Source: Bispira polyomma
Taxonomy: Eukaryota
Length of the DNA: 64,000 nt
Reading direction: 5' to 3'
Assembly (NCBI GenBank): GCA_965649765.1
Contig: OZ287751.1
Coordinates: 80,290,001-80,354,000 of the forward strand
A program made the position numbers and the translations under genes. This document shows positions 3,102 to 62,662 of this stretch, piece after piece. The notes under the pieces were generated by a model. It was not told the DNA's origin and made no database searches. It saw only the letters and a list, made by a program, of their open reading frames with translations. How positions within the stretch are numbered: the stretch's first letter is position 1; each line of letters opens with the position of its first letter.

Positions 3102-3171
3102 ATGATAATTATCACAGGATTACTTTTGTGCCTGTGTGCCGGATTACAAGAAGTTAGTGCACAGGATGAAG
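3102..3171 (+). CDS. Exon 1: signal peptide
   Basis: MIIITGLLLCLCAGLQEVSA-QDE; donor AAG|GTATGT; acceptor CATCAG at 3077 implies an upstream 5'UTR exon. Confidence 0.75.
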
Positions 3172-6100: not shown

Positions 6101-9100
6101 TTGTTATTTTATTTGTTAAATAAATTTGTTAAGTGAAACTTTTTATCTTTTCCTGTTACAACCTCAAAGCAACCGGTAATTGCTACCACGCTGGCTCCCG
6201 TCACCGTAACAGGAAAATTGGGGGCTCGTCCGGGATCTAACCATTTGATCTAACTATTTTATAGCTTTTTGAAAATTCATTTATTTTGTTGAAAAATATA
6301 TTACAGTCAACAGTGCTCAAAATGGCTAGTGCTAAAGAGTTTGTACAGTCACCATCTATTGAGGTTCTAGAAACTTTTAAAAAAGATATGTTAATGCAGA
6401 TAGCACAGGAATTACAGTTAGATGTGAAAAGGTCAACACGTAAACATGAACTTAAAAGGCTTATTGTTGAACAGTTAGTTGATGAAGACCTTTTGCATGA
6501 TAGTTGTTTAGAAGTGTATGAACCTCTGCCAATGGAACCTTCTGGGCAATTTGAGATCAGGCGATTAGAAATTGAAAGAGAGCTAAAACTTAAAGAGCTT
6601 GAAGCTCAGCAACAAAGGCGAAAAGAAGAGCTTGAGCTTGAGGCTCAAAGGCGAAAAGAAGAGCTTGAGCTTGAGGCTCAAAGGCGAAAAGAAGAGCTCG
6701 AAGCTCAAAAATTTGAAAAAGAGCTTGAACTTAAACATGAAAGGGAAATGAAGGCTTTGGAACTCAATGCTCGCCGAATTGCCCATGAAGAGTCCATGGC
6801 AACCAAATTTGATTTGGGTAAAAATATGCGACTGGTACCACCTTTCAACGAGTCCGAAGTTGATAAATATTTTCAACACTTTGAGCGAGTAGCTCAAAAT
6901 TTGAAATGGCCCACAAACCAGTGGCCTTTATTGCTGCAAAGTGTTTTCAAAGGCAAAGCCCAAGAGGCATATACAGCTTTGCCAATTTCTGAATGTAGAG
7001 ATTATGACTGTGTGAAAAATGCTATCTTGAAAGCATATGAGTTGGTACCAGAAGCATATCGTCAAAAATTCAGAAATTATCGTAAGCAAGAAAATCAAAC
7101 TTATGTTGAATTTGCCCATGAAAAAGAAGTGTACTTTGACAGATGGTGTAATTCTAGAGAAGTTGGTACAGACTTTGAAAAGCTTAGGCAAGTCATTTTA
7201 ATTGAGGAGTTCAAAAGGGGTGTTCGTGATGACATTAAAACCTATCTGAGTGAACAGAAAGTAGAAAATTTGCAAAAAGCAGCAGCTTATGCTGATGATT
7301 ATGCGCTGACTCACAAGTCCACTTTTAACAAGAGTAAATCCTCTGGTCCCACAAAGAAGTTTTATCCTGAAGTAGGAAAGAAATTAGAAAATGTAGCTCC
7401 AGAAAAGAGTTCAGATAAGTTTCAAACAACAAGGTACTGTAACTTGTCTTTCTGCCTTAGTAAAACGGATGTTCCTTCTAGGAAAAATATACCCCCTAAA
7501 ACTATTGAGACGGAAGACATACAGTCGTGATGAAATAATACTAGGAAACTCACGGAAATGGGTGAAAACAGACGATTATTGGGACGAAAATGTTATAGTA
7601 GTGAATTGGCAATACTCGGAAATGGGCGGAACCACTCTACCACCTTTTCCCACCTTGGTGAGGCAGAAGTTTTGACCCTACCCAAAACTCCCTCCTCACA
7701 CGGCTGACTGCAGAAGGTTTGGGATTAGGAAGCTGAAGTTAAGGCAGTTAAGTTATAGATAGGGTTTTTCGCACCAGAAGGCGTTTTTCTAATCTTCGCT
7801 TACTGTCTCTACATACCGGGGGGCCGCGGTGGCCTAGTGGTTAGCAAGCATTGCGCTTCACAATCACTGGTCTCTCACCTCTGGGTGGCGTGAGTTCGAA
7901 TCCTGTCGATGCCTATGTGGGAAAGGTGGTAGTTCCTTACTGTGAGCCGCTGGTTTCTCTGCAGGACCTTGACCAACTGTATGCAGTGTTTCCTCCAGCG
8001 TTTCCAACTACCTACCAAATATCCAAATTCAAATTCAAAGTCTCTACATACCGGCATAGTGAGAACCACACCAGTCTAGCTTAGGCCTTACACTGTTGTC
8101 TTCTGTTCAGATTGTGTGAACCTCCACGATAGTGATGCTCAGTGTGAACAGTGGGCCAGAGACAATCAATGTGTAATCAACCCTACATGGATGGTCATTT
8201 ACTGTAGGAAGGCTTGTGAGGCTTGTCTGGAAACAGGTAAGGAGGGAGTGAGGGGAAGGGGGGGGGGATAAGATGTCTTATTAGTCCATTTGTCTGTGGG
8301 AGCCGAACTTAGGATTTGGCTGATCTTAAGATGGCTATGGCCCAATTAAAGATCATAATTTTAGTAGCCTATCTTAAGATGGGATGGCCGGTCCATCTCA
8401 AGATTGGTCAGCAAAACTAGTCCAACTTAATTTGTTAAGTGCTTAAAATATATAATGCTATAAAGGTATTTCTATTACATTTTTGATAATTAATTCAATG
8501 TAAATTATTTTACATTTGATCACAGCTCTCAACTTTTTATCCAATGCTGACTACTATTCACTGAAAGATATGGATTTTTTTTTACTGAGGAACTTATATT
8601 TCAAATGAATTCCAAAATTAGAATCTGAAGTTTGGCTAGAGCCCATTTTAAGATTGGCCAAATCTTATTATTTAACCATAACGATTAATAAAATTAATGA
8701 TTCACTATTTATATGGTTAAGTATGCATATTTTAAGTAAGCTAAGCTGTATATAAAACTCCCTGCGAGACGTCAAGTCCCATACTTGGTGAAATTGTGTT
8801 GTTTACTCTGTAGGAGTAAGTTAGTAACACTTTTCTTTTTGTATTCAGTAGAATATATATATGGTGTGCATGAATGAATATCATTTGTGCTACAATTTAT
8901 GCACCTATTTTGAAAATGTTACAATGTTTTTTTTTTATTTTTTGTGTAAATGTCACAATATATATTGTTCATTATTCTATTTTCTGTTTTTTTTTTACAA
9001 ACCGCTATAAATATAGCTTTAATTATGTACATATTTTATGTTCAATTTGCACTGTGCACTAAATATGCACCCCTTTCACTGCTGTTCTGCTAAAAACACA

Positions 9101-12100
9101 CAGTGCATCATTCAAAGAATTTGAGCTGGAGTAAAATTTTGTTTGAGACTTACTCGGGAATTTACGGAAGCCTATATCTAGTAATTACTAGAAACAGCTA
9201 TCTTGTAATTACTAGATAGTCCTATCTAGTAATTACTAGATAGGGTTATCTAGTAATTACTAAATAAGTGCTTCTCGTAATTACAAGATAGCTGCTTCTA
9301 GTAATTACTAGATATATCTTGTAATTACTAGATATATGTTGTAATTACAAGATAGGTGTTTCTTGTAATTACAAAAAGTAGCTATCTTGTAATTACGAGA
9401 AAGACCTATCTAGTAATTACTAGATAGCCCTATCTTGTAATTACTAGATAAGTGTATCTTGTAATTACAAGGTATATCTAGTAATTACAAGATAGCTTTT
9501 TCTAGTAATTACAAGATAGGGATATCTTGTAATTAGAGGATAGAGCTATCTTGTAATTACTAGATAATTCTTATTTTTTATGTGTGAGCTGTATAGGCTT
9601 CCATAGGAATTCAAGGTCAAAACATAATCCAGTATATGCCGAGTTTTCTGTCGTTAGTGAGGCCTTGATTTACTGATGTACGCATAGCGAGAGACAGAGT
9701 TGTTTACCATAGCCAATCGTTGCAAATCTGACACATTTACAAAGATTTGCTATAGTATGCAACTCTGTCGCCAACTGCCCCAAATCAGTAAACATGTGTT
9801 ACTATGACGTATATAATACAAGATTCCATGTTTTATGTTATAAAGACCTCGCATGTGCAAACCTGTATGGCAATGACACTCTGTGCAGTCAGTGGGCCAA
9901 TCAGAGTGAGTGTATCATCAACCCTGGGTGGATGGTTCCCAACTGCAGATATGCATGCAGCGCCTGCAGTCATTTGGGTAGTGGGCTATGTTTTTGTTTT
10001 ATACGTTTCTTACAGAGATGTAAAAATGTACTGTTTGCTTCCTCTATGAAACACCCCCTCATTTGGTAGGGTAAAATGTGTGTCTTTATAGACAGGCGAG
10101 TCTTTACATACATGTAAAAACATAAAGCAACCAATAGTAGAGGGTAGTTTAAAGAAGGCTATTTATGGACAGGGTATTTGTTTAATACATTAGTGCTCTC
10201 TCAAATAGTCAATGTTCCAAAATCTGGTCGAGTCCAATTTCCGGTCTAAACATTTTTAACGTTACAATTGAGATGCATTACACATAAAAATCACAAACTT
10301 TAAATGTTTGAAATAGAAATGTTTGTTTATATAAATACACATAACGATGGCCAGATTCAACGGTGGAAGAAACCCGTGCGAACATTGGTGAGAGGCCAAT
10401 GAATCTAAAGCAAGCACTTCTAACCACTAGGCCCCATAATAAGGGTTGAATAAGCAGTGGTATTGCCGTATTGTACACAGTACTAGGTATGTTGAACGAT
10501 ATACAGGACAGTCACATAGAACTCTTCCACAGCAACGTACTCGCCTCACACTTCTGTAGTTGTGGGTTAAAATGTTGTCTATGGCGTTTATGTGAGAGTT
10601 GGCGATAGACTTGCTGAAAGCCTGTTGCTCTGATTTCTTTCACCATTTGATTTTCACGATTTGATTATCTTTCATATGACACAAGACATGTAGAAAGTGA
10701 CTTTAATTTTAACTACATTAAACTCTAAGAAATAGATTTAAATCTAACAAACACTTCTCATCTAAAATATCAGGAAAACATGCTTGACACTTGGCAACCA
10801 GTGGGTAAAATGTTCGATTAGTAATAAAATTATACTAGAACCTCTATTATCCGAACATGTTGGAAGAGCTAGATTTTGTCCGGATAATAGAAGGTTAATA
10901 GAAAAAGGAAAATAGAAGAGGCATTTCTGTTTAAAACAATATATATATATATATATAAACAGAAAAATATAAGTTTGAAAGAGTGAAACTGAGTTCATAA
11001 AATGAAATATTCGGAAAATAGAAGTTCGGATACAAAAGGTTCCACTGCACAATCATGAATGCACATATCACATATTAGCTCCTTAGAATTTAATAAACCA
11101 CGAGAAAAACTGCGCGCTAAAAAAGTTTGATAATATTAAAAACATGTCACAAGACATTCACTTCCCTTCACTGCTACTGCTCTGTAGGGTGTACGAATGA
11201 AGAAGGATTTTCCCATAACTGTGATTGGTGGGCATTTGACGCTAACTGTCGGGGCAGTCATGATGTGTTGACTCTTGAAATGTGTACAAGATCGTGTGGA
11301 TTGTGTCCTCAGTTTACTGAAGAAGAAACCACAACACTGAGTACCGTTTCTGTTTTTGTCACCGTTGATTCTAAAACCTCACTCGACTGGTTACCGACTT
11401 CTGTCAGCTCAGAGGAAGCAGAAAGCGGTGATGGTATTTATGCGTTATTTTTTTAAAATAATTTACGTGTGACTGTCATTGGCTTACCTGTTTATGTATT
11501 CACTGACATGGTTATAATTGGTGATACATGTTGCACTGTGTCAGGCTTTGTGTTGATTTGCCTTGTTTTTCACAGTTTTTGTTTGTGTGCAATTTGATAA
11601 ACATTAAGCTGTTTTTAATCACAAAGGTTTTACACACTTAAACTAGCAATAATCTCCAGAACTAGATTTTTATGTACATGTGTACACAAGGAAGATTGTC
11701 TAAAATCTGACCACATATATTCGAGTTTTTTGCTGAAAGTGCTGGTCAAATGAATGGTAAGATTACTAGGTTATTCATCTTCATAAGGAACTCTACATAC
11801 GTAGTATTTTAGTTTAAGTATAAGTTTAAGACCTTTGATAAAAAACAGACCCTTGCTTTTTGTTTAAATGTAGTTTGTTATGTTACATTGCTACAGCACC
11901 TTGTCTTACACAGTTTTTATAGTAGTTTAATTTCAATCCATTTCTTCAGAAATTTAAAACATCTTGTTAATCATTATAATATTCATGATTGTCATATTGG
12001 CATTTGTATATGAAAACACACTTTGGAAATCCACTTTGGTGTAAACCATTCAATTTTTATTCCTCTAATTCTACCACACAAAAGCATACCGGTATTTGCA

Positions 12101-44901: not shown

Positions 44902-44970
<69 letters not shown>

Positions 44971-53900: not shown

Positions 53901-56900
53901 AACGTGCTTTATTGATGCTAGGCATCTTCTAAAGCGCAACAGCAGAATCATTAGTCCAATCATTAAGTCCATGGAAATTGCAGAGTCGTAAGGAAGGAAG
54001 TGGGAGCGTGCACGAGGAAAACTAAGGTGGGTAGGCAAGATTAAAAAGATAGGTTTTAAGCTTTTTCCTAAAACCGATAAGTGTGTCAACTGATCTGAGG
54101 TCAACTGGGAGACTGTTCCATAACCGTGGAGCTGCGGTGGAGAACGCTCTGAAACCCGCCCTTCTGATTGGTCTGACCGAAGTGACAGAGAGTCTGTTGC
54201 CTCTCTTGCGGTTACTAAAGGAAAGAAGGGAGGCAAGGTAGGGTGGCTGTTGAGTGATTACAGCCTTAAAAGTGGTAACATGAATTTTAAACAAAATTCG
54301 AGATTTAATGGGCAGCCAGTGTAATTTTTTGAGGTAAGGAGTGACGTCTGTGCGACAATCCAGGCGAAAAATGACCCTACATAGGTAGTTTTGGATGGAC
54401 TGGAGCTTTTTAATGTTTGACTTATTTGCTTCGTACAAGAGAGAATTGCAGTAGTCGAGGCGGCTACTTACAAGGGCATTTGCCACAATTATCGCTGTGT
54501 CCATGGACAAGTGGTTTCTGATTCTTTTGATGTCGCGTATGTGGTAATAGCAGGAGCGACAGATGTTGGCAACATGAGTATCGAACGAAAAAGCTGAATC
54601 AAAAGTGACACCCAGGTTTTTAGCATTTTCGGAAGGTAGTATTAACACCTCAAAAAGGTATTTCATTTTCCTTCAGTAGCTCGAATTAGCAACATGTTCA
54701 GGGGAGTAGCCAGGATTTTTCATCTGGTACTCCCAAATTAAAATTAAATCAATATATTAGGTCCTTTTTTGTCCTACAAAAAATTAAATTCGTAGGGGGG
54801 AGGGGGGGGGGGGGGCGTTATGTGAGGCAACAACATAATAAACTTGAGGAGTACCAAATTTTTTTTTTGAACAACAGGAATCTATGTTAAAATAAAATGA
54901 ATTTTTTTTTTTTTTTTTTTTTTTTTTCAAATATTTTTTTTGGGGTTTTTAATTTTTTTTTTCTTTCTTGTCATTAAATTGGTAAGCCTGGGCGTACTGG
55001 CGTTAATGGTAGCTACACCCCTGCAAATCCTGGTCATTACCACTCGGCGAACCTTGAAACCTCTAAATTTCCCCAAGAAACATTTATAAAGGGGCTGGAA
55101 GCATGTATCAGTTTTTATTGTTCAGTCAAGTGAAAGAGATGGTTCCACATGGGTTAATAGATATTGCAAGAGGTCTGCAAGGTTTAGTTGGCTACATGCA
55201 ACTTCAAGTAATGTATATTATAGACACTAAAGGAAGAAAAGTCAGAGAATCCACATGTTCAAGGAAAGGTGGGTAGAAGAGGAGGAGCAAGATGTAGATT
55301 CTGGATCAGACTATGGCTAAGGGAAGAGAACAAGGTCATTATACAGCACTTGTGCCACGCATGGAGGTTCAAGATCTCCAGTCTTACAGGAATTTATTGA
55401 GGATCCCCTGGAATTATTCCAGGAAATGGAGAGGAGGGTGGAGCACAGGATACAGAAACAGACCACCTGGTTCTAGAAACGACTGTCCCCTGGACTCAAG
55501 ATAGCTATCCTTTGAAACATTTAGCAACTAGGGGGCCATACACATCACTGCAACACTCTTTAGTGGTGTGCAGGTCAAGCATCACCACGTTTATGCCACA
55601 GGTTTGCCAGGCAATCATAGATGAGTTCCAGGAAGAATTTCTGTCATGCCCCACCACCCCAGAGGACTGAAAGAAGGTTTGAGTCTGTCTTCAGGAACAC
55701 ATGCAATGTACTAAATGCCCTGGGGCCATAGATGGGCAACATACTGCCATTCAACGTTCAAGAAAAGAGGGGCAGTAAATATTTAAACTACAAAGGCTTC
55801 CACTCCATGGTGATGCTGGCCTTAGTGAATGCAGAATACAGGTTCCTGTGGGTCAACATGGGATCTAGTGGGTTCAGCTCAGATTCCCAGATATTCATTA
55901 GGTCAGAACTGAAAAAGAAGATAGAAGATCGGTCCATCAACTTCCCCCTCCTGAAGCCATAAACCCTTTCAGGCACCCCATCCCCCACTTCATCCTTGAG
56001 ATGGTGCCTCTGCACTGAAGATCTTGCTCATGAAACCCTTCTCCAGATGAGGGATGTACCCGAATTAGCGGATTAACAACTACAAGATTTCCGGAGGGAG
56101 AAGGGTAGTAGAGAACTTTGAACTGAGGTAATGGGCTCTACTCTCTACTATGCAGCAAGAACCACCAGTGGTAAAAACCGTAACCCTAGCCTGTGTCGTC
56201 CTACACAAGTGATGAGAACCGCTACTAAAATAAACCAGGCAATGTAGCACCAAAATCCAGAAGACGACCCACCCATTCCACAGGAAGCACTTGCAGGAGA
56301 TAATATCCCACATGTCAATAGGAATCTTAGCGGGGGAGCCAAGCAATAGAGAGAGATACTCATAGGCTAATAGTACATGGAGTATGAACCAATCGGTCCT
56401 TGTGACGACCAACCAAAAAAGGCCCTTTTCAGGGCCACCCAAAACTTCCAAAAACAATATCTAAGCTTTTCTTCTTGGTTACCCAAATTTTTTTACAGAA
56501 AGCCCCCGTGACAAGAATCAAACTGGCCCCACAAATGACTTTACTTAAGCCCCTGTCACACTATGCCGACCGATCAGGAGGAGACCCCGATAATGCGGTC
56601 GGGAGCAATCTTTAACATTTTGCCCCAATTTTGGAAAAAAGGGCGGGAAATTTTACGTCTCACGACTATAATCGTAATGGTTCCCGAGTCTTATGATAGA
56701 TCAGGAACAAGGCCCGATAGATGGGGACAGATCGGGAATTTTTCCAAGAAATGGAGAGGAGGGTGGCCCCCAGGACTGCAAAAAACACGACCTGTAACCG
56801 CACGGCACTCTCACCTGGACTGAAGATTGCAATAACTTAAAGACATTTGGCGACTGGGGAGTCATACACCTCACTTCAGTACACATTTCGGGTGAGGAGG

Positions 56901-59900
56901 TCAACCATCACCACGTTTGTTCCCGAGGTTTGCCAGGCAATTACCAACAAATTCCAGGTGGAATTCCTCTGCTGCCCCACCACCCCAGAGGACTGGAAGA
57001 AGGTCGCAGCTGTTAACAGAGACAACTGGCAAGTCCCCAATGCCCTGGGGGCCATAGATGGCAAACACATAGCAATGATATGTCCAAGAAAGGGGGGAGT
57101 GAGTTCTACAACTACAAGGGATTCCACTCCATTGTTATGCTGGCCCTGGTGGATGCTGAGTACCACTTCATGTAGGTGGACCTGGGTTCCATTGGCTCCT
57201 GGTCTGATTCACAGATTTTCAACCAATCTGAATTGAAGGAAAATATTGAGGACCAGTCTATCAACTACCCCCTACCTGAACCCATAAGCCCTGGTAGGCC
57301 CCCCTCCCCCTACTTCATCATGGGAGACGACGCATTTGCCTTAAAGACCTGGATGATGAAACCCTTCTCCAGACGAGGCCTGGACCCCAACGGATGTTTA
57401 ACTACAGGATATCCCGCGCATAAGGGTGGTGGAGAATGTCTTTGGTATATTAGTGGCCAGGGTTAGACTTTTACTCTCGACGATGCAGCAGGAACCACCT
57501 GTGGTAGCCACCTTAACCCTAGCCTGTGTAGTCCTCCACAACATGCTTAGAAGTAAAATTATCAACCATGGAGGAGACCGCCCAAACCCAGCAGATGACC
57601 TCTCCGTCCCACAGGTTGCACTGATTGCAAATCAACACAACCCAGCCAACATCAGAAATCCTAGCCGAGTAGCTAAGGAACAGAGAGATGCCCTGATGAA
57701 CTACTTCATGAATGAACCATTGCAGAACGACCATGTTTGAAGCCTCCCCTGAGCTTGAGGCAGAAAAAAACAATCGGCCCTTTTTAGGGCCACCCAAAAC
57801 ATCCAAGAACATGTTCTGAGCTTTTGTTACAAAATAAAATAAAACCCAAACCCCTCATTACAAAATACACATTGGCCCCACACAAAAAATCCACAATACA
57901 GAGACAAAGAACAAAACATTATCACCCCCTTACATACTTAATGAAATGAAATTCATAACTGTCTAAACCCTAGTAAGAACTTGTAAACTCCAATCTTAAA
58001 CACCTTTAAGTGGAACTCTCCCCTTTAGTTTTAAAACCAAGGAAATAAGTCTGTCAAATTATTTCTTTTTTTATTTGGACAGCATAAAAATAAATTGCTC
58101 AGTTCTTTAAACTCTGTAAACTGCTTCAAGTAGCACTCTTTTAAGGGGACATTGTCTTAAAAAGACTTCTACTTGGATGGGTTTTCAAATTTAAAGGGGG
58201 TTATATGTGGAAGGGCTTTATATTATAAAGGGGATTATATTTGGAAGGGTTTCATATCATAAAGGGGATTATATTTAGAAGGGCTTTTGTATGTTTGATA
58301 GTTTAGAAATTATTTTCATTTTTTTGTGTGGGGCCAAGTTTATTTTGTTTTGTGTGTGAGTGAGATATATTATTTGTGGGGCCAGCAGGGGAGGAGCCAG
58401 GATTTTTCATTTGGTACTCCCAAATTAAAGCAATATATTATGTTCTTTTTTTGTCTTACCAAAAATTCAATTCATGAGGGGGTGGGACATCAAGGTAATA
58501 TTTTGGTTTAATTGGGGGATACCAATTTTTTTTTATTTAACAAGAGAAATCTATGTTACTACTAAAACAAACAGAATAAAAGGAAGTCTAAATTTATTTT
58601 TTTTCAAATTTTTTTCAAATTTTTTTTTTTTTTTTCAAATTTTTTTTTTGCTTTCTTGTCATTAAATTGGTACGCCTGGGTGTACTGGCATTAATAGTAG
58701 TTACGCCCCTGATGTTATTACTGCAGTATTTTCTGTTTTAAAAATGTAAACATAATCAGAGGCCATTATGAAATGACGGAAGTCATCTGTGGTGATTTTC
58801 TGATTGTCAGCTTTAGAAAATAGTAGTGCTACTGAACTGACAGTTCATTTATTGACTTTATGTGGTGTAATACCTGCAGAACAGTTCTACTATGTTTGCA
58901 CTTCTTGCATTTTAACTCCTTTTGCAATTAAAACCGCAGTATTTGCCCGTGCTGAAAGAAAACACCTGGGGAATAGATTCTGATTACTGGGGGTCTTTTC
59001 ATAATGAACTCCGGTAAGTTTTTTTAAACATACAATTTTGCCGGTTCTGGTACATCTTAAATGTGGAGTGTACTAAATGAACGTAAAACAGTATTATGGG
59101 AGTTTTGACTTCTTTCCACTGAGTGCCAGTAACTGTCAATCTCCAAACTGAAGACAGAGGCTTGAGGATGACTATATATTTAATGTCCCTACGTTCTTAA
59201 CCCGGCACTGGGATAGGCCCCAATATCTGAGGGCTGCCATTTTGAGTAGTTATCTGAACCACTATATACATGTCTATACCTGGTCGCCGCAGGCTGGTAT
59301 CAAAGTCAGGTGCTCTGTGTTCCTAAGCATCATAGGCCATAGTGGCAGACGTCATTCTTACTCTTAAGACCTAATATTAATCAAGTTTTGGATCTTATTG
59401 CTAAAATTTATACACCAGGGCCCGTATTCACAAAGGGACTTAGCCAGGTCTTAAGCTTAAATCTAGCACAAAAGTATACTGAGTTAAGCCTAAGACCTGG
59501 CTAAGTCTTTTCGTGAATACGGGCCCTGGGGCCTTATTCATAAACATTCTTAGAAATTTGTTTGTCTCAGCCAATGGGATTCTTTAAAAAATATTTTCAG
59601 TCAATCAAGTTGATTGAGACAAAAATTTAAGAATAAGAATCTTTGTGAATACCAGCCATAGTTTATGAATGGGAATTTCTTACTTCTCACAACAACAAAA
59701 AAGCTTTATAAAATGAATAGTTTATTATTGTCATTAAAAATCAGCGAGGTTTGATATAATTACATGTAGCATTTTGATTTATTTTATACAATTATAGCCT
59801 TAACTTTTCCATGAATTTCTTGTCGAATTGTTTACTGTATGTAATTTATTTAAAATAGTCATTCATTATGTAAAACAAACCAGCTTTTTATTGTTTTTTT

Positions 59901-62662
59901 TAGAAGAAAGAAGGGGGAGATTTACTTTGATCATGAGAAAATGGCAGCAATGTACAATAAAAGGTACGTCTCACATCAATTAGGTAAATTATAAAACAAT
60001 TATTGTTATAGCATTTATATGACACTCTATTAATGTATCATCTTCTGAGGTGCTTGTTTACCAAAAAAGGATAGTCCTAGGTTGGGTCATTATCAGTAGA
60101 CAATGACGTGTTCACATCTTGCCTAACGATGCTATCCCACCAATTTAAAGAGCCTGTAACGATATTAGCACGAGTCGAATCTGGGCCCTTCCGATCACCA
60201 GACAAACTCTCCAAGCCAAGAGTCAAACCAACCAAGAACCTTCTGATCATCAGAGCAACTCTGTAACCACTAAGCAATGGAAGAAACTTTTATTTCAACC
60301 AATTTGATTGGCTCAAAATATTTTTTCGAACAATCTGATTGGCTAAGCCCAAGAAAATTTTAAGAATTGTTTTCTAAAAATGTTGGTGAATAGGGTCCCT
60401 GTACAGATCAACTCCCTAGCCACTTAACACTGGAAGAATACTTCTACAGTAAACTCCCTGTAACTAGAATAAGAAAACGTTAAATTTGTTTAAAACTGAA
60501 CTAATTTTCTGTCTGAACATTCCGAAATACTTGTTTCGAATGAAGTAGAACTAAAACATGATTGAAAGAATCTAATCACGTGGACATTTTGTCTTATGTA
60601 ATTAAAGGATGAGCAAACATTCTTTTCTAATGGATAATGACAATTGCTAATGGTTTGTGTAATGACAGAAATGGAGGTTTTATGAAGACATTTGATCTAC
60701 TTGATATTGAGTGGTACATTTAGAAATGCAATAAAACTGTAATTATTGTCCATGTAATAAGTTAGATATCAACACAAACTCTTATACTCTTGATGTGTAG
60801 TAAAAATGCTTTTGTAGTTTAGTATATCATTTTTTACAAAAGATATTCAAGATTTGTTACCTTTGCCGGGGAGGTTATCTTTTTGCTCTTTGTCCATTGG
60901 TTTGTTTGTCACCAAAATAACATGTAAAATACTAAACCTATGTATGCACGACATTTGATGATGGCTTGGGTCAAGGAAGAATTCATTAAATTTTAGAGTG
61001 AATCTGGTTAGAATGTCAGATCTAGGAATTCTTTCACTTTTTTTTAGCACTGTAGCATCTTGGCGAAGGTATTTACTCTACTGAGTTCTCTTCTACATGT
61101 AGTTGTACTTGATAGATATATTGTATTGCAAATTTAGTTAAAGCTCTCTGATCACAAATAACAATTCCATGTAATAGACGTTTATCATCAAGTCAGCTGA
61201 ACATTGGGAGGAACCATGTGATGACTGATTTATGTAACCTACATTGCTTATTATAACCCAAATTTATGTACAATACTTTAATTAAAAATGAACCCTTTCG
61301 ATCTCTAGGTTGTCCATTAGCATCTGAAGGCATTTGTTAATCCCAGAACCTATGTCTGTCGGCAAAGCAGTCGACACCCTAAAAAATATTATTTTATTAT
61401 CCTTTAGTTCCTCGCAATAGAAAATTGTTAGTACTGCAGGCTTCTCAATTAAAAAATATTATACATGAGTCCATTATTAAATGCCAACAATTTTACTTCA
61501 GTTCCCGGCGATACTTAAAATTTCCATTGCGGTCAAAAGGGTTGATAGTAAAGGTGAAAGACAAAACTATAATTTCAAGTGTTACTAGTAACAGTCTCAT
61601 CCCTGTAATGCATGTAACATGTGACATTTTACACAAGCAGGCTAAATATGCAGTCAGCCTTTGTGGCTAAGTCAGAAATCGAGAGCAGCCCTGGTGGAAC
61701 ATTGCCTACAATGAGTAGATATAAAGGTATACAGGATAACTAGTCAGGAGACCTTAAAGTATATTCCCTGATATAGCATCAATGCTGAAATAAACACTCA
61801 GTCATTTAAATTTGATTGTATTATAAAACTACAGATAACAAGAGTTGTCTTTTAAAAAAGACACAGGCACACAGTGTGCAAAATATTAATCCGACACCTC
61901 TCATTTTGGCCAGGTCGACGGCAATGACCAATCCATGAAGGCCCTATATAATATTTCCACATCTTCAAAGAATGTACAGTAAATCCTCTATGGGTGAACA
62001 CCCATAAAATAGTAAATTCCTCTCCATTGTCCACAGGTTTTCCTGGCCCCTGTTTTGCCATTAATGAATTATAAAGAACCCCCTTTGAATAGTGAACACC
62101 TCTTTATAGTGAATCTTTTGGCTGTGTGCCAGGGGGCCTTATTTACAAAAGGTCTCAGCATTAACTTCGTCTACAGCTTAAGATTCTTGCCTTTGAATAT
62201 TGGGTGAAAACATTAAGATTTTAGTCTTTATTATATATAAGTGACAGTAGCAAAAGATCTTTGGTTAGTGTTAGCTTTGCCCTTAACACTTAAAGACTAA
62301 CAACAGGCTGTACTTAAATATTTTAGACATAAATGTTAAGCTTGGGACTAAGTCAGGACTTAGGCATTTTTGTGAGTATGGCCCCAGATTGTTCACTAAA
62401 AAAATCTGTTACTGTATATCTCAACCATCAACACAAAATCTACTAAAATGAAGAAAATTAATGCTTCTGTATATTTTTACCCTGAGTCAAAGACATTACT
62501 TGACTGCCTTTTACCCAGAAATTATTGTTTATTTCAGTATTGATGATATTTTAAATTATTTTCAATTTAAATAATATATGATATATTGATATATTTTTTC
62601 TTATAATTTTGCCAGGTGATGTCAAAAGTCATGGTGTGGATACACATAAACTTGGGGTGTAA
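3102..62662 (+). CDS. 35-exon gene for a ~3,420-aa type I membrane protein: SP-3xShK-mucin-3x(YWTD propeller+EGF)-mucin-HYR-Sushi-furin-site domain-GCC2/GCC3-TM-tail
   Basis: 35 exons with GT-AG boundaries join in phase into one frame (10,266 nt including the stop). Domains were recognised by eye from Cys spacing and YWTD-like motifs. No ortholog is recognised. Confidence 0.85.
3831..4030. repeat. 60-bp tandem repeat, ~3.3 copies
   Basis: ACATGATACAGGTATTAAACGTACGTTTGAATATTACACTAAACAGAKACATTACACTAA. Confidence 0.95.
5395..6211 (+). mobile_element. 5' LTR of a Ty3/Gypsy element
   Basis: TGTTAC...GTAACA termini, TATA-like box ~5627, AATAAA ~6119, followed by a PBS. Confidence 0.8.
6219..6236 (+). 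other. Primer-binding site, tRNA-Pro
   Basis: TGGGGGCTCGTCCGGGAT, the canonical PBS-Pro 18-mer. Confidence 0.9.
6322..7530 (+). mobile_element. gag: Gypsy (Gmr1-like) gag; homology ends ~7433; no pol or 3' LTR
   Basis: Coiled coil with 3x QRRKEELELEA, then VPPFNESEVDKYFQHFE and YELVPEAYRQKFR capsid/SCAN-like motifs. Confidence 0.85.
7820..8039 (+). mobile_element. tRNA-derived SINE (MetaSINE-like), young, with a 15-bp TSD
   Basis: A box TGGCCTAGTGG, B box GTTCGAATC, (CAAATT)n tail; GTCTCTACATACCGG at 7805-7819 and 8040-8054. Confidence 0.9.
8111..8236 (+). CDS. Exon 2: ShK domain 1
   Basis: CVNLHDSDAQCEQWARDNQCVINPTWMVIYCRKACEAC; TTCAG acceptor, GTAAG donor, phase 1-1. Confidence 0.9.
9163..9605. 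mobile_element. Non-autonomous DNA transposon (IS3EU-like) with an internal palindrome array
   Basis: TIR TACGGAAGCCTATA / TATAGGCTTCCATA; 6-bp TSD GGAATT; ~17 copies of ATCTAGTAATTACTAGAT. Confidence 0.8.
9846..9977 (+). CDS. Exon 3: ShK domain 2
   Basis: CANLYGNDTLCSQWANQSECIINPGWMVPNCRYACSAC; phase 1-1. Confidence 0.85.
10833..11050. mobile_element. Tc1/mariner-type MITE (related copies ~26345-26539 and ~36505-36660)
   Basis: TAGAACCTCTATTATCCGAAC ... GTTCGGATA...AGGTTCCACTG termini. Confidence 0.6.
11188..11433 (+). CDS. Exon 4: ShK domain 3 and start of S/T/E-rich linker
   Basis: CTNEEGFSHNCDWWAFDANCRGSHDVLTLEMCTRSCGLC...EEAESGD; phase 1-1. Confidence 0.85.
12144..15452 (+). CDS. Exon 5: giant acidic Thr/Ser-rich mucin/proteoglycan-like exon (~1,100 aa)
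   Basis: Lies within ORF 12110-15532; acceptor AAACAG at 12143. The donor is uncertain: phase-1 AA|GTACAG at 15452 was chosen because exon 6 needs phase 1. Confidence 0.8.
15899..15975 (+). CDS. Exon 6: start of beta-propeller 1
   Basis: PVIFISNETHILKYDSGVTSTFLHQ; TTTTCAG acceptor, CAG|GTAAAT donor. Confidence 0.75.
16697..17092 (+). mobile_element. piggyBac-like MITE family (other copies ~4500-4743, 16100-16280 rev, 17815-18076, 35745-35945, 37340-37500 rev, 53797-58810 split, 61290-61543)
   Basis: TAACCCTTT...AAAGGGTTAA termini across copies; shared body CCTATGTCTGTCGGCAAGCAGTCGACACCC. Confidence 0.65.
17327..17462 (+). CDS. Exon 7: YWTD repeat, propeller 1
   Basis: IVGLAVDDQNNAIFWSNN...IYRASLHG. 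Confidence 0.9.
18576..18747 (+). CDS. Exon 8: YWTD repeat, propeller 1
   Basis: LTFDPNAKLLFWTDAQKKCIQVSSYDG...PRGIVADPVNG. Confidence 0.92.
18710..19575 (+). repeat. Five degenerate copies of the exon 8 3' end plus donor
   Basis: GGTATTGTGGCTGATCCTGTCAATGG|GTAAG recurs at ~18818, 18928, 19328, 19422 and 19538. Confidence 0.85.
19857..19988 (+). CDS. Exon 9: YWTD repeat, propeller 1
   Basis: YIYWNDQGSKKIERSRYDGSQRETLLEGDMVYWPNEMDV. Confidence 0.9.
21021..21298 (+). CDS. Exon 10: YWTD repeats, end of propeller 1
   Basis: LLWTDARLQRLQILDVD...PVYGLSV...AYISVW. Confidence 0.88.
21677..21916 (+). repeat. ~65-bp tandem repeat spanning the exon 11 acceptor
   Basis: GATTTGTTTGTTTACTCTAG|CTGACCATCCCTGTCACACC...CACCTGT x3 plus a degenerate copy. 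Confidence 0.92.
21871..22002 (+). CDS. Exon 11: EGF domain 1
   Basis: PCHTAQSGCSHLCLMTGVDTYTCVCPDVGGLLLSEDQHTC (LRP-type post-propeller EGF). Confidence 0.92.
22181..22400 (+). mobile_element. Old MetaSINE-like copy (others ~1310-1410 rev, 21530-21670, 31762-31965, 50347-50570)
   Basis: tRNA-like head plus GAAAGTTTGTCAG...GGTTTCTTCCACC...GATATGACCT...GTTGAAAG body. Confidence 0.65.
23908..24053 (+). CDS. Exon 12: start of propeller 2
   Basis: PTEMLLFAHMGRGEINMVS...PVGVTYDPITQ. Confidence 0.88.
24028..25255 (+). repeat. 45-62-bp tandem array of the exon 12 donor, 23 copies including the real site
   Basis: GTGACCTATGACCCGATTACACAG|GTAA(C/G)TTATAGT... Confidence 0.97.
25738..25846 (+). CDS. 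Exon 13: YWTD repeat, propeller 2
   Basis: LVYWSDVQEKKIYRAPLQG...LGYVEG. Confidence 0.9.
26558..26738 (+). CDS. Exon 14: YWTD repeat, propeller 2
   Basis: LFLDWKQRKLYFTN...EPRGLFVDSLNG. Confidence 0.9.
28025..28137 (+). CDS. Exon 15: YWTD repeat, propeller 2
   Basis: YLYFTDIADEPKVRRCGLDGSNLETL...LELPNG. Confidence 0.92.
28925..29647 (+). repeat. 49-bp minisatellite (~14 copies, 344-bp higher-order unit) starting at a MITE-like terminus
   Basis: TACAGTCAAGC then (CTGTACTAGTGACCACTCTCAAAGAGAGACCACCCCTATTTAAAGACCA)n. Confidence 0.93.
29919..30061 (+). CDS. Exon 16: propeller 2
   Basis: VAVGSEGVFVVDSYY...KLVESQLK; phase 1-0. Confidence 0.82.
30002..31095 (+). repeat. 84-bp tandem array of the exon 16 donor, 13 copies; degenerate copies to ~31445
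   Basis: ...GGAAAGTCAGCTTAAG|GTAAAGGGTCTGA...; 252-bp higher-order duplication. Confidence 0.96.
31546..31714 (+). CDS. Exon 17: end of propeller 2
   Basis: PFGLSSSEERTLYISDWGTGSVLQY...LSEPSGLFY. Confidence 0.9.
32971..33099 (+). CDS. Exon 18: EGF domain 2
   Basis: LCNQSCEGLCLKGRDSEYDCFCDGYYSNLQREDKSFCS. Confidence 0.9.
33906..34089 (+). CDS. Exon 19: start of propeller 3
   Basis: ENFIIVSDLNSIKIKSLD...ALYYDSKTATVFCTDVN. Confidence 0.88.
34560..34924 (+). repeat. ~119-bp x3 tandem repeat of the exon 20 acceptor
   Basis: CAACTCCCTAA...TACTTTCAG|AGGAACTATAGAAC... Confidence 0.9.
34840..35070 (+). CDS. Exon 20: YWTD repeat, propeller 3
   Basis: GHLYWTSEFEGCIKRA...LDHPRSLTV. Confidence 0.88.
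36018..36273 (+). repeat. ~89-bp x3 tandem repeat of the exon 21 acceptor
   Basis: TTACCTTCAG|ACTACTCTACTGGACAGAACTGGGATCC. Confidence 0.92.
36231..36418 (+). CDS. Exon 21: YWTD repeat, propeller 3
   Basis: LLYWTELGSTPAVWYSRVAGTDRK...PNDVVYD. Confidence 0.9.
37543..37746 (+). CDS. Exon 22: end of propeller 3
   Basis: PFFGLQTDGQFVYYSDWGTGSVLMY...LLRPTRFVVHHP. Confidence 0.9.
37710..37982 (+). repeat. 70-bp x4 array of the exon 22 donor; resumes at 39284-39380 after the HINE
   Basis: ACCAGATTTGTAGTACATCACCCCACACAGATCA(A/C)AG|GTACAGT. Confidence 0.92.
37986..39283 (+). mobile_element. Helentron-associated non-autonomous element (HINE/DINE-1-like)
   Basis: 5' subTIR ATGTCCACCCC with a local inverted copy, CCGTCC microsatellite, ~157-bp internal repeats, 3' subTIR GGGGTGGACAT at ~39186, terminal hairpin and CTAGTT; TT target. 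Confidence 0.8.
39700..40087 (+). repeat. 69-bp array of the exon 23 acceptor (5 full copies plus partials)
   Basis: TATAACTCTGTGTAG|ATAACTGTAAGAGGGCTGGATGTACAGATATCTGCC. Confidence 0.95.
40050..40160 (+). CDS. Exon 23: EGF domain 3
   Basis: NCKRAGCTDICQPYPGGYSCECLNGQPQLNKLSC. Confidence 0.88.
40915..41085 (+). CDS. Exon 24: Thr-rich linker (NAGNAG acceptor, alternative start 40918)
   Basis: DDITTEVTDNVTTTTTPVPVEEETTAP...; phase 1-1. Confidence 0.8.
41370..41650 (+). mobile_element. tRNA/CORE-type SINE with an L2-derived 3' tail (related: ~22755-22880; 34400-34575 rev)
   Basis: Degenerate A/B boxes; tail 41588-41637 matches the LINE 3' end at 53892-53948. Confidence 0.7.
42607..44583 (+). 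CDS. Exon 25: second giant T/E/D mucin exon (659 codons) with a 16-aa repeat
   Basis: Within ORF 42561-44624; CTCTAG acceptor, TAG|GTATTG donor, phase 1-1. Confidence 0.88.
42950..43720 (+). repeat. Coding 48-bp VNTR (DVDTTIEDYEFTTEIA), ~16 copies
   Basis: Visible in the translation; 43141-43319 recurs 240 bp downstream. Confidence 0.95.
44905..44968. repeat. (TA)n microsatellite
   Basis: ~30 TA units. Confidence 0.98.
44969..45842. mobile_element. Tc1/mariner/pogo-type non-autonomous element
   Basis: TIR CCGTATTCGACGTAATTA(G/C)CGCAC at both ends, TA runs on both flanks. Confidence 0.88.
46011..46118 (+). CDS. Exon 26: HYR domain, N-terminal half
   Basis: PDLSFLYCPSDMAVYTDTDTTQVWWKDPVA. 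Confidence 0.85.
46893..47036 (+). CDS. Exon 27: HYR domain, C-terminal half
   Basis: SGAELAVGINAINYEAT...TAECIFTVTV. Confidence 0.85.
47862..48056 (+). CDS. Exon 28: Sushi/CCP domain
   Basis: YCESPPMIHHGEMVC...CEVQCDEGF...YSCLTGGWEP...AC. Confidence 0.9.
48038..48840 (+). repeat. ~42-bp array of the exon 28 donor (~10 copies plus remnants)
   Basis: CCAGATGGCATGTATA(C/T)|GTAAGTATG... Confidence 0.92.
48435..48761. mobile_element. MITE with a TAA TSD (PIF/Harbinger-type target)
   Basis: TIR GTGTATGTACACATGTATGCGGCT(C/T)CCGA; TAA at 48432-48434 and 48762-48764. Confidence 0.85.
49403..49673 (+). CDS. Exon 29: SVEP1/uninflatable-like inter-domain containing the RQKR furin motif
   Basis: ...VTCGQSQNRQKR-ALTSGGVSLVIKLWFN; phase 1-2. 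Confidence 0.85.
50786..50964 (+). CDS. Exon 30: leads into the Cys-rich repeat
   Basis: ...ESDCPPGTVMFTEQC. Confidence 0.85.
51434..51570. repeat. ~44-bp x3 tandem repeat
   Basis: TGTGGCAAT...TCATTCATTGCTGTTCATAACGTGATCA. Confidence 0.85.
52278..52430 (+). CDS. Exon 31: GCC2/GCC3 (ephrin-receptor-like Cys-rich) repeat
   Basis: CPSGTFYNDDPGVCELCPSGYYQGLEGQSSCVACP. Confidence 0.92.
53182..53338 (+). CDS. Exon 32: transmembrane helix
   Basis: LPLVIGLSVAGGLLFLAAFALACYTC-HRVFK. Confidence 0.9.
53880..54641 (-). mobile_element. 5'-truncated L2/CR1-group LINE: RT C-terminus, 3'UTR, (TAA)n tail
   Basis: AKNLGVTFDSAFSFDTHV...ALVSSRLDYCNSLL...LHWLPI...AAPRLWNSLP...LKTYLF (ORF 54022-54666). Confidence 0.93.
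54699..55023 (+). mobile_element. MITE copy A (CAGGGG...CCCCTG)
   Basis: TIR CAGGGGAGTAGC / GCTACACCCCTG; homologous to 58386-58711. Confidence 0.85.
55330..56470 (+). pseudogene. Degenerate PIF/Harbinger transposase (DDE_Tnp_4), copy 1
   Basis: YLNYKGFHSMVMLALVNAEYRFLWV...GFSSDSQIF; many stops and frameshifts. Confidence 0.88.
56548..57830 (+). pseudogene. Harbinger element copy 2: 5' TIR plus a frameshifted transposase
   Basis: TTA|AGCCCCTGTCACACT terminus; LATGESY, GAIDGKHI, GDDAFAL, VVENVFGIL, ACVVLHNML motifs split over frames. Confidence 0.92.
58386..58711 (+). mobile_element. MITE copy B, same orientation as copy A
   Basis: CAGGGGAGGAGCCAGGATTTTTCAT ... GTAGTTACGCCCCTG. Confidence 0.85.
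59416..59528. mobile_element. Palindromic Tourist/Harbinger-like MITE (relatives 59528-59658 and 62130-62387)
   Basis: CAGGGCCCGTATTCAC...GACTTAGCCAGGTCTTA / TAAGACCTGGCTAAGTC...GTGAATACGGGCCCTG. Confidence 0.85.
59904..59963 (+). CDS. Exon 33: basic stop-transfer / cytoplasmic
   Basis: RKKGEIYFDHEKMAAMYNK; strong polypyrimidine acceptor, AAG|GTACGT donor. Confidence 0.8.
60857..61100 (+). mobile_element. Short HINE-like element (related copy ~22435-22670, reverse)
   Basis: TTACCTTTGCCGGGGAGGTTA...TTTGTTTGT...TTGGCGAAGGTA...TCTACTGAGT. Confidence 0.6.
61641..61726 (+). CDS. Exon 34: cytoplasmic
   Basis: LNMQSAFVAKSEIESSPGGTLPTMSRYK; open phase 2-1 segment bridging exons 33 and 35. Confidence 0.65.
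62616..62662 (+). CDS. Exon 35: C-terminus ...DTHKLGV*
   Basis: TTTTGCCAG acceptor; TAA at 62660; AATAAA at 62821 and 62995. Confidence 0.65.

What the first reader, a model, noticed from the sequence alone, without database searches (positions are those of the whole stretch)
3102..62662. Mosaic receptor: ShK domains in place of LDLa repeats on an LRP-like propeller core, joined to an SVEP1/uninflatable-type C-terminus
Seen: SP-ShK x3-mucin-(YWTD+EGF)x3-mucin-HYR-Sushi-RQKR-GCC2/GCC3-TM. Known: LDLR/LRP receptors pair propellers with LDLa repeats and carry NPxY (or PPPSP in LRP5/6); neither is present here. HYR-Sushi-dibasic site-GCC2/GCC3 is the order found in SVEP1 and uninflatable. I do not recognise this combination. 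Inference: a lineage-specific, exon-shuffled glycocalyx/matrix receptor that displays ShK modules on a very long stalk (mucosal defence, adhesion or matrix/biomineral role).
Basis: partly seen in the sequence, partly recalled or inferred. Interest (0 to 1): 0.78.

Follow-up and report, generated by a model that had tools for sequence, protein, structure and literature searches.

The report
Giant mosaic membrane mucin-like gene
The window holds what is most likely one very large gene of a marine invertebrate for a membrane-anchored, strongly acidic, sugar-carrying stalk protein built from shuffled standard modules; the combination appears to be new, but this is an ordinary kind of novelty and no RNA data exist to prove it is one gene.

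Summary
A 31-exon + strand model (3102-53338, about 3,336 codons) has no stop codon. It encodes a signal peptide, three ShK modules, a 1,110-residue acidic Thr/Ser stalk and three LRP4/LRP6-like YWTD propellers, each followed by an EGF. After these come a second stalk (56 + 659 residues), HYR, Sushi, a module with a conserved furin site (RQKR), one Ephrin_rec_like (GCC2/GCC3) module and a single membrane span.

Splice sites picked without regard to phase agree at 25 of 30 junctions (P = 2e-8). No LDLa module exists in any frame. The stalks are Pro-poor and polyanionic, so they are not classic PTS mucin.

The last four exons recur in the same order in an unrelated 1.9-kb metagenome contig, so the membrane-proximal cassette is conserved.

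Several claims could not be supported or tested:
- The stated identity of module order with SVEP1 and uninflatable is not supported.
- ShK on mucin stalks is already known in nematodes and recurs elsewhere in this genome.
- Propellers without LDLa are also known.
- No RNA run holds this locus, so the one-transcript claim, the 3' end (62662) and the cytoplasmic tail stay untested.

Verdict: a real, probably single, lineage-restricted mosaic gene. It is a new combination of known parts, of modest interest.

The parts
3102..3171 (+). Exon 1: start codon and signal peptide, donor in phase 1
   Evidence: ATG followed by a hydrophobic core (Kyte-Doolittle 19-mer maximum 1.9). The donor GAAG|gtatgt is in phase with exon 2.
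8111..8236 (+). Exon 2: ShK module 1 (phase 1-1)
   Evidence: PF01549 at 23.1 bits, above the 20.9-bit cut-off.
9846..9977 (+). Exon 3: ShK module 2 (phase 1-1)
   Evidence: PF01549 at 16.2 bits, below the cut-off. It is 55% identical to module 1 (E = 2e-16).
11188..11427 (+). Exon 4: divergent ShK module 3 plus the start of the acidic Thr/Ser linker (phase 1-1; alternative donor at 11433)
   Evidence: No Pfam hit. The six Cys and the W-A pair align with modules 1 and 2.
12144..15475 (+). Exon 5: stalk 1, 1,110 residues (T 22%, S 12%, D+E 22%, P 2.4%, no Cys, net charge -213)
   Evidence: Open frame 12107-15529 and composition. The donors are weak; 15475 (phase 0) fits the strong acceptor at 17327.
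17327..21298 (+). Exons 6-9 (17327-17462, 18576-18747, 19857-19988, 21021-21298): YWTD propeller 1
   Evidence: Ldl_recept_b at 26.1 and 26.9 bits. Best PDB match is LRP4 at 4e-8.
21871..22002 (+). Exon 10: EGF 1 (phase 1-1)
   Evidence: FXa_inhibition at 30.4 bits (below its 33.4-bit cut-off) and EGF_LRP2 at 22.6 bits (below its 30-bit cut-off). Six-Cys alignment with the other two EGF exons.
23908..31714 (+). Exons 11-16 (23908-24053, 25738-25846, 26558-26738, 28025-28137, 29919-30061, 31546-31714): YWTD propeller 2
   Evidence: Ldl_recept_b at 21.8 bits. Weak PDB matches to LRP4, LRP2 and LRP6 at about 1e-3. Phases match at every junction.
32971..33099 (+). Exon 17: EGF 2 (phase 1-1)
   Evidence: No Pfam hit. 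The six-Cys pattern aligns with EGF 1 and EGF 3.
33906..37746 (+). Exons 18-21 (33906-34089, 34840-35070, 36231-36418, 37543-37746): YWTD propeller 3
   Evidence: PDB matches to LRP6 at 7e-13 and to LRP4 at 1e-5.
40050..40160 (+). Exon 22: EGF 3 (phase 1-1)
   Evidence: FXa_inhibition at 17 bits, weak. Six-Cys alignment.
40918..41085 (+). Exon 23: stalk 2a, 56 residues, Thr-rich (phase 1-1)
   Evidence: Composition. Donor TTATAG|GTA.
42607..44583 (+). Exon 24: stalk 2b, 659 residues (T 27%, D+E 26%, P 0.9%, net charge -145), containing a 48-bp repeat of 14.7 copies at 42992-43696 (phase 1-1)
46011..47036 (+). Exons 25 and 26 (46011-46118, 46893-47036): HYR domain split by a phase-1 intron
   Evidence: The second half matches PF02494 positions 44-81 at 18.2 bits, below the cut-off. 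The first half has no hit on its own.
47862..48056 (+). Exon 27: Sushi/CCP (phase 1-1)
   Evidence: PF00084 at 26.4 bits.
49403..50964 (+). Exons 28 and 29 (49403-49673, 50786-50964): unassigned four-Cys membrane-proximal module with furin site RQKR (49609-49620). The last residues of exon 29 begin the Cys-rich module.
   Evidence: No Pfam or PDB match. Single copy in the genome. Three related exon ORFs from metagenome contigs keep all four Cys and R-x-[KR]-R.
52278..52430 (+). Exon 30: Ephrin_rec_like (GCC2/GCC3) module (phase 1-1)
   Evidence: PF07699 at 42.8 bits. The counterpart in L002 scores 34 bits.
53182..53338 (+). Exon 31: membrane span and basic stop-transfer residues
   Evidence: Kyte-Doolittle 19-mer maximum 2.45. 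43% identical to the matching exon in L002.
59904..59963 (+). Candidate exon 32 (cytoplasmic, basic); not verified
   Evidence: Strong pyrimidine tract, phase-2 acceptor and donor AAAAG|gtacgt. No comparative or RNA support.
54694..58716 (.). Dead Harbinger-type transposon remnants inside the intron after the membrane-span exon
Evidence: Weak Plant_tran hit.

Best explanation
The locus is one gene of at least 31 coding exons. It encodes a type I membrane glycoprotein of about 3,350-3,400 residues.

From the outside in, the protein has:
- three ShK/SXC caps;
- a 1,110-residue polyanionic Thr/Ser stalk;
- three LRP4/5/6-type YWTD propeller-EGF units;
- a second polyanionic stalk of about 715 residues;
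- HYR and Sushi modules;
- a conserved membrane-proximal module cut by a furin-type convertase at RQKR;
- one Ephrin_rec_like Cys-rich module;
- the membrane span and a short tail.

Shown: the modules, their order, an open phase-compatible exon chain, one signal peptide, one membrane span, absence of LDLa, and conservation of the furin motif and of the last four exons in another organism.

Inferred:
- It works like a transmembrane mucin. The O-glycosylated acidic stalks hold protein-binding heads (propellers, ShK) far above an epithelial surface.
- Furin cleavage turns it into a two-chain complex whose large ectodomain can be shed.
- The gene arose by shuffling phase-1 module exons. These would have joined a ShK-mucin cassette, an LRP-type propeller array and a separate membrane-anchor cassette.
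For: Modules:
- Pfam hits for ShK, Ldl_recept_b, EGF-type, HYR, Sushi and Ephrin_rec_like.
- All three propellers best-match LRP4, LRP6 or LRP2 in the PDB.

One open chain:
- 31 GT-AG exons carry no stop.
- Splice sites chosen without regard to phase match at 25 of 30 junctions (P = 2.4e-8). The other five have near-equal in-phase alternatives.
- Only exon 1 and exon 31 are strongly hydrophobic.
- The acidic Thr/Ser composition starts inside the ShK3 exon and continues into exon 5.
- No ATG-plus-hydrophobic first exon was found before the propeller block or before HYR, while the same scan recovers exon 1.

Comparative support:
- The furin motif and four Cys are invariant in relatives.
- The order of exons 28-29-30-31 is kept in contig L002. 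tblastn gives 1e-13, 2e-9 and 2e-11 for exons 28, 30 and 31. Exon 29 gave no tblastn hit and is seen only by eye as an open frame. L002 also has Ephrin_rec_like.
- ShK fused to a mucin array exists elsewhere in this genome.
- ShK/SXC mucins are known in nematodes (PMC7333891, PMC2563036).
Against: - No RNA run holds the locus, so no junction is proven.
- The junctions that carry the claim, either side of the two large stalk exons, are the ones with the weakest splice signals. They were among the five blind mismatches.
- Reading through the donors of exon 5 and exon 24 meets a stop within 12 to 18 codons, so shorter products are possible.
- No full-length relative was found in 1.84 billion representative proteins.
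- The fold of the furin module is unknown. AlphaFold2 on exon 28 alone gave pLDDT 45.8. The only SEA lead is an ESM Atlas score of 0.84, below that tool's threshold.
- The stalks are Pro-poor, so heavy O-glycosylation is assumed, not shown.
- The tail and the stop codon are unresolved.
Confidence: 0.55

Rival explanations
1. There are two or three neighbouring genes on the same strand. One is a secreted ShK-capped acidic mucin (exons 1-5), like the ShK-mucin genes elsewhere in this genome. Another is a separate propeller-EGF membrane protein (exons 6-31), which might itself split again before HYR.
For: - ShK-mucin units exist on their own at C2:98.9 Mb.
- Exon 5 has only weak donors, and reading through it meets a stop after 18 codons.
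- No RNA evidence exists.
- LRP5/6-type proteins begin directly with a propeller (established knowledge).
Against: - Exon 6 has no start codon and no signal peptide.
- The strongest acceptor in the region (17327) is in phase with the donor at 15475.
- No candidate first exon was found in 15530-17300 or in 44600-46000.
- Exons 23 and 24 are open, symmetric phase 1-1 exons that need partners on both sides.
Confidence: 0.25
2. The locus is decaying or partly non-functional. The many tandem copies of splice junctions and the transposon insertions would disturb splicing, so the full-length product is rarely or never made.
For: - Eight tandem arrays duplicate exon edges together with their splice sites.
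- The introns hold Harbinger remnants and a SCAN/Gag-like ORF.
- Several Pfam scores are sub-threshold.
Against: - About 10 kb of coding sequence in 31 exons carries no stop and no frame break.
- The Cys patterns of every module are intact.
- The C-terminal cassette and its furin site are conserved in other organisms.
Confidence: 0.12
3. It is a divergent orthologue of a canonical LRP (a Wnt co-receptor of the LRP5/6 type, or LRP4) that lost its LDLa repeats and gained other modules.
For: The propeller exons best-match LRP6 and LRP4.
Against: - The genome has separate loci that carry both LDLa and YWTD modules, as canonical LRPs do.
- This locus has three propellers rather than four and no LDLa.
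- No PPPSP or NPxY was seen in the candidate tail frames.
- Identities to the LRPs are low.
Confidence: 0.03

Closest known systems
LDL-receptor-related proteins LRP4, LRP5 and LRP6
   Same: - Tandem units of a six-bladed YWTD propeller followed by an EGF.
- Single-pass type I membrane topology.
- The best sequence matches of all three propellers.
   Different: - No LDLa repeat at all.
- Three units instead of four.
- No NPxY or PPPSP seen.
- About 1,800 residues of acidic stalk, plus ShK, HYR, Sushi and Ephrin_rec_like modules that LRPs lack.
YWTD proteins without LDLa (pro-EGF, nidogen G3, ROS1/Sevenless); from established knowledge, not tested here
   Same: They show that YWTD propellers work as protein-binding platforms without any LDLa partner. 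Pro-EGF is also a type I membrane protein of propellers and EGF modules.
   Different: None has ShK caps, polyanionic stalks or the HYR-Sushi-furin module-Ephrin_rec_like anchor.
Nematode ShK/SXC mucins (Toxocara canis Tc-MUC-1 to 4, C. elegans PHAT proteins; PMC7333891, PMC2563036)
   Same: - ShK/SXC modules joined to Ser/Thr-rich mucin-like tracts.
- The toxin Lys-Tyr dyad is absent. In the window this was read from the three ShK modules.
- The same kind of cassette recurs in this genome.
   Different: Those proteins are small and secreted. They have no propellers and no membrane anchor.
Vertebrate transmembrane mucins with a SEA module (MUC1, MUC13, MUC16 type); functional analogy only
   Same: A long glycosylated stalk, then a small membrane-proximal module that is cleaved in a loop, then optional Cys-rich modules, one membrane span and a short tail.
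   Different: - Cleavage here would be by furin at RQKR, not autoproteolysis at G|SVVV.
- SEA membership is unproven.
- The stalks are Pro-poor and highly acidic.
SVEP1/Polydom and Drosophila uninflatable
   Same: They share module types: HYR, Sushi/CCP and Ephrin_rec_like in SVEP1; HYR, CCP, EGF and a membrane span in Uif.
   Different: - The order and the numbers differ. SVEP1 is vWFA, Eph-like, HYR, EGF, PTX and a long CCP array, and it is secreted (PMC10281526).
- Uif has CLECT, 3 CUB, 8 CCP, 2 FA58C, 3 HYR and EGF-like repeats (PMC3340373).
- None of vWFA, PTX, CUB, CLECT or FA58C was found here.

Membership tests
LDL receptor / LRP family | LDLa (class A) ligand-binding repeats | tested here: not met
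   None of the 31 exon frames hit PF00057. No LDLa six-Cys spacing occurs in any of the six frames of the 64 kb. The same scan finds 3 and 5 modules in two LRP loci of this genome. An LDLa split across exons would be missed.
LDL receptor / LRP family | YWTD six-bladed propeller followed by an EGF module | tested here: met
   Ldl_recept_b and FXa_inhibition/EGF_LRP2 hits. PDB best hits are LRP4, LRP6 and LRP2. Three units in total.
LDL receptor / LRP family | Cytoplasmic NPxY (or PPPSP in LRP5/6) | tested here: inconclusive
   The tail exons are not resolved. Neither motif was seen by eye in the + strand frames of 40 aa or more (25 aa or more from 59964 on) after the membrane span.
ShK/SXC domain (PF01549) | Six Cys in the ShK spacing, scoring above the family cut-off | tested here: met
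   Module 1 scores 23.1 bits (cut-off 20.9). Module 2 scores 16.2 bits but is 55% identical to module 1. Module 3 matches by pattern only.
ShK-type potassium-channel toxins | Lys-Tyr functional dyad between Cys 3 and Cys 4 | tested here: not met
   No Lys-Tyr pair lies between Cys 3 and Cys 4 in any of the three aligned modules. The dyad criterion is as described in PMC7333891.
SVEP1/Polydom | vWFA, pentraxin and a long Sushi array; secreted | tested here: not met
   No vWFA or pentraxin hit, one Sushi only, and a membrane span is present. Domain list from PMC10281526.
Uninflatable (Uif) | CLECT, CUB, FA58C and an array of EGF-like repeats, together with HYR and CCP | tested here: not met
   No CLECT, CUB or FA58C hit. 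The only EGF modules are the three that follow the propellers. Domain list from PMC3340373.
SEA-module transmembrane mucins | SEA fold next to the membrane | tested here: inconclusive
   No PF01390 hit at E <= 0.1 and no PDB profile hit. AlphaFold2 on exon 28 alone is unusable at pLDDT 45.8. The ESM Atlas neighbour 'SEA' scores 0.84, below the tool's 0.9 line. The two exons of the module were not joined for folding.
SEA-module transmembrane mucins | Pro/Thr/Ser-rich tandem-repeat domain | tested here: not met
   Thr+Ser is 34%, but Pro is only 0.9-2.4% and Asp+Glu is 22-26%. Only stalk 2 has a tandem repeat, of 16 residues and 14.7 copies.

The most novel reading that the evidence does not exclude
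This is the first described member of a family of furin-processed, polyanionic 'propeller mucins'. Its membrane-proximal cassette is a four-Cys module with an invariant R-x-[KR]-R loop, followed by Ephrin_rec_like and a conserved membrane span. That cassette would be a new anchoring unit, analogous to SEA, shared by at least two further animal lineages that are so far seen only as metagenome contigs.
Probability: 0.3. Interest if true: 0.45.

Novelty: new variant of a known kind. Interest (0 to 1): 0.3.

Why it matters
If it is one gene, it shows LRP-type propellers used as heads of a surface mucin rather than in an endocytic or Wnt receptor. It would also give a furin-cut, conserved membrane-proximal module that may be an invertebrate counterpart of the SEA module. 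That would interest people who study the glycocalyx, mucus and tube or cuticle secretion in marine worms, and the evolution of mosaic extracellular proteins. It does not open a long-standing question. Lineage-specific domain mosaics made by phase-1 exon shuffling are common in invertebrate genomes.

Tried and rejected
- RNA evidence: the look-up of sequencing runs returned only three DNA-like runs from one study. Read laying was therefore not used, because it could not test splicing.
- Full-length relatives: the single exhaustive protein search, with exon 28 as query, gave three exon-sized ORFs from metagenome contigs. It also gave spurious bacterial DUF11/DUF7507 repeat proteins, which were rejected as a shared short motif.
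- The contigs that carry those ORFs are at most 1.9 kb long.
- A metagenome contig scan with alignment A1 found nothing.
- The search for homologous proteins was not used. Its length filter (0.55-1.75 times the query) cannot reach a protein of about 3,400 residues from any stop-free reference in the window.
- AlphaFold2 on exon 28 with four sequences gave pLDDT 45.8, so no fold search was run on it.
- A PDB profile search with A1 found nothing. The ESM Atlas search on exon 29 gave nothing with a family.
- Own-genome protein searches with single exons return only the query itself, so distant paralogues are not excluded.
It was redone with coordinates only.
- My first dynamic-programming models mis-set several sites (exon 3, exon 5, and exons 21-24). 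These were corrected by reading the sequence.
- The spliced model was never joined for any search or fold tool. Exons were searched one by one by reference.

Full report
**Setting.** The window is G000:C4:80290001-80354000 of a 1.035-Gb genome in 75 contigs. The organism is coded. Other agents of this scan call it a worm, probably an annelid, and I did not test that. The DNA is AT-rich, at 31-47% GC. It carries many short + strand open frames separated by introns that hold repeats and transposon remnants.

**Check of the observation.** I scanned 31 candidate exon frames one by one against Pfam.
- ShK (PF01549) scores 23.1 bits at 8080-8268, above the cut-off, and 16.2 bits at 9713-10066, below it. 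The third candidate at 11121-11453 has no hit.
- ShK modules 1 and 2 are 55% identical. Module 3 keeps all six Cys and the W-A pair.
- Ldl_recept_b scores above the cut-off in two exons of propeller 1 and one exon of propeller 2.
- Exons of all three propellers find LRP4, LRP6 or LRP2 as best solved relatives. The E-values are 4e-8, 7e-13, 1.7e-5, 1.3e-5 and 1e-3.
- Each propeller is followed by a six-Cys EGF exon.
- Downstream come the second half of a HYR domain (18.2 bits, below the cut-off because an intron splits the domain), a Sushi (26.4 bits) and an Ephrin_rec_like/GCC2-GCC3 module (42.8 bits), all.
- A hydrophobic membrane span follows.
- RQKR lies at 49609-49620.

So the list of modules and their order are right. 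The label 'mucin' is loose. The two large stalk exons are 22-27% Thr, 7-12% Ser and 22-26% Asp+Glu. They have only 0.9-2.4% Pro and no Cys, and net charges of -213 and -145. Only the second stalk holds a tandem repeat, of 48 bp in 14.7 copies.

**Gene model.** A chain of 31 GT-AG exons runs from the ATG at 3102 to the membrane-span exon ending at 53338. It is open throughout and totals about 10,010 nt, or 3,336 codons (corrected).
- As a test, I took for each exon the best-scoring acceptor and donor without looking at phase. The phases agree at 25 of 30 junctions, against 10 expected by chance (P = 2.4e-8).
- The five misfits each have a near-equal in-phase alternative:
  - exon 3 donor at 9977;
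  - exon 5 donor at 15475 onto the strong acceptor at 17327;
  - exon 9 acceptor at 21021;
  - exon 23 at 40918-41085;
  - exon 24 at 42607-44583.
- Exons 23 and 24 are both symmetric phase 1-1 exons, and both end in TTATAG|GTA.
- The ShK, EGF, HYR, Sushi and Ephrin_rec_like modules all sit on phase 1-1 exons, the classic mark of exon shuffling.
- Only exon 1 and exon 31 contain a strongly hydrophobic 19-mer. The model therefore has one signal peptide and one membrane span.
- A scan for an alternative first exon (ATG, hydrophobic stretch, donor in the right phase) finds none before the propeller block or before HYR, but it recovers exon 1.

The weak point is that the junctions flanking the two large stalk exons have the poorest splice signals. 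These are the junctions that carry the 'mosaic' claim. No public RNA run holds this locus, and other agents met the same gap for this genome. The spliced model was searched exon by exon.

**3' end.** After the membrane-span exon the frame needs a phase-2 acceptor. The best candidate is 59904-59963, a short basic exon with a strong pyrimidine tract. What follows is undetermined. No NPxY or PPPSP was seen in the candidate frames, but this cannot count as a test.

**Absence of LDLa.** No frame of the window has the LDLa six-Cys spacing. The same pattern finds 3 and 5 modules in two LRP loci of this genome. The genome has at least 842 LDLa candidates and about a dozen YWTD loci. Several of those carry both modules, as canonical LRPs do. 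ShK loci (at least 46 hits) and YWTD loci lie near each other nowhere in those lists. The window's own weaker modules fall below the listing thresholds, so the lists are lower bounds.

**Relatives.**
- Exon 28 (the furin exon), exon 29 and a propeller exon (E19) are single copy in the genome.
- The exhaustive search of 1.84 billion representatives with exon 28 found no full-length protein. It found three exon-sized ORFs from metagenome contigs, at 35-40% identity. These keep the four Cys and an R-x-[KR]-R motif. The bacterial DUF11/DUF7507 hits share only a short motif and were set aside.
- One contig, L002 (1,895 bp), shows more. Counterparts of exon 28 (1e-13), exon 30 (2e-9, Ephrin_rec_like at 34 bits) and exon 31 (2e-11) lie in the same order with very short introns. 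An exon 29-like frame lies between them, visible by eye only, with no tblastn hit.
- The membrane-proximal cassette is therefore a conserved unit in at least one other organism. Nothing can be said about what lies upstream of it there.

**The furin module.** It has no Pfam or PDB sequence match. AlphaFold2 on exon 28 alone is unusable at pLDDT 45.8. An ESM Atlas neighbour annotated SEA scores 0.84, under that tool's reliability line, and exon 29 gives nothing. The predicted strand-helix-strand-strand pattern, with the cleavage site in a loop, is compatible with a SEA-like sandwich. That is a hypothesis, not a result.

**Comparison with the known.**
- The propeller-EGF array is LRP4/5/6-like. 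The protein fails the defining LDLa test, so it is not a member of the LDL receptor family.
- Propellers without LDLa are known from pro-EGF, nidogen and ROS1 (my knowledge).
- ShK/SXC modules on mucin tracts are known in Toxocara Tc-MUC proteins and C. elegans PHAT proteins, where they lack the toxin dyad (PMC7333891, PMC2563036). The three modules here lack it too.
- Elsewhere in this genome, at C2:98.9 Mb, ShK exons lie beside SUEL-lectin exons. One 1,867-codon frame there fuses a ShK directly to a PTS array. A ShK from that cluster is 42% identical to module 2 here.
Only module types are shared.

**Mechanism (inferred).** The protein would be a type I surface glycoprotein that works like a transmembrane mucin. 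Two long polyanionic, probably O-glycosylated stalks hold three propeller platforms and three ShK caps far from the membrane. Tyr residues in acidic contexts in the stalks are possible sulfation sites. Furin cleavage next to the membrane would give a two-chain form that can release the ectodomain. Ligands and tissue are unknown.

**Verdict.** A single gene is likely at about 0.55-0.6, against about 0.25 for a split into two or three genes. The combination is not found in any family I could test or read about. It is assembled from known cassettes by an ordinary process, and the key junctions lack RNA proof. Interest is modest.

Noticed in passing
window 21682-21916, 24028-25254, 30015-31095, 34594-34925, 36021-36274, 37710-37981, 39759-40091, 48038-48436: Eight tandem arrays (42-119 bp units, 2.8-22.6 copies) each have one end anchored 18-85 nt inside an exon and run into the intron, so they copy the splice site. 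Arrays on the donor side extend downstream and arrays on the acceptor side extend upstream. In the model the exon always uses the copy nearest the exon body.
   Followed up: partly
window 6265-7527 (+), inside intron 1: A 421-codon open frame with a SCAN domain (PF02023, 46.6 bits). It is a retroelement Gag-like or domesticated capsid gene lying in the sense orientation inside the first intron.
   Followed up: partly
window 54694-58716: A 4-kb insertion with dead Harbinger-type transposase fragments lies in the intron after the membrane-span exon. Only a weak Plant_tran hit was obtained.
   Followed up: partly
L005 and L006 (G000:C2:98885000-98904999): A cluster of ShK exons interleaved with SUEL-lectin exons. 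One 1,867-codon frame fuses a ShK directly to a classic Pro/Thr mucin array, so ShK-capped mucins are a recurring gene type in this genome.
   Followed up: partly
window 15476-15529 and 44584-44621: Reading through the donors of both large stalk exons gives a short hydrophobic C-terminus and then a stop. This is probably just T-rich intron sequence, but intron retention would yield shorter products with a hydrophobic end.
   Followed up: no
window 19213-19353 and 19308-19482: A dispersed or tandem copy of the 3' end of exon 7, including its donor, lies about 560 nt downstream inside the next intron.
   Followed up: no
P0002-P0004 (bacterial DUF11/DUF7507 repeat proteins): Exon 28 shares a short motif around its second Cys with every repeat of these bacterial surface proteins, which produced E-values down to 4.5e-10 through multiple stretches. 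I judged this convergent or compositional and did not pursue it.
   Followed up: no
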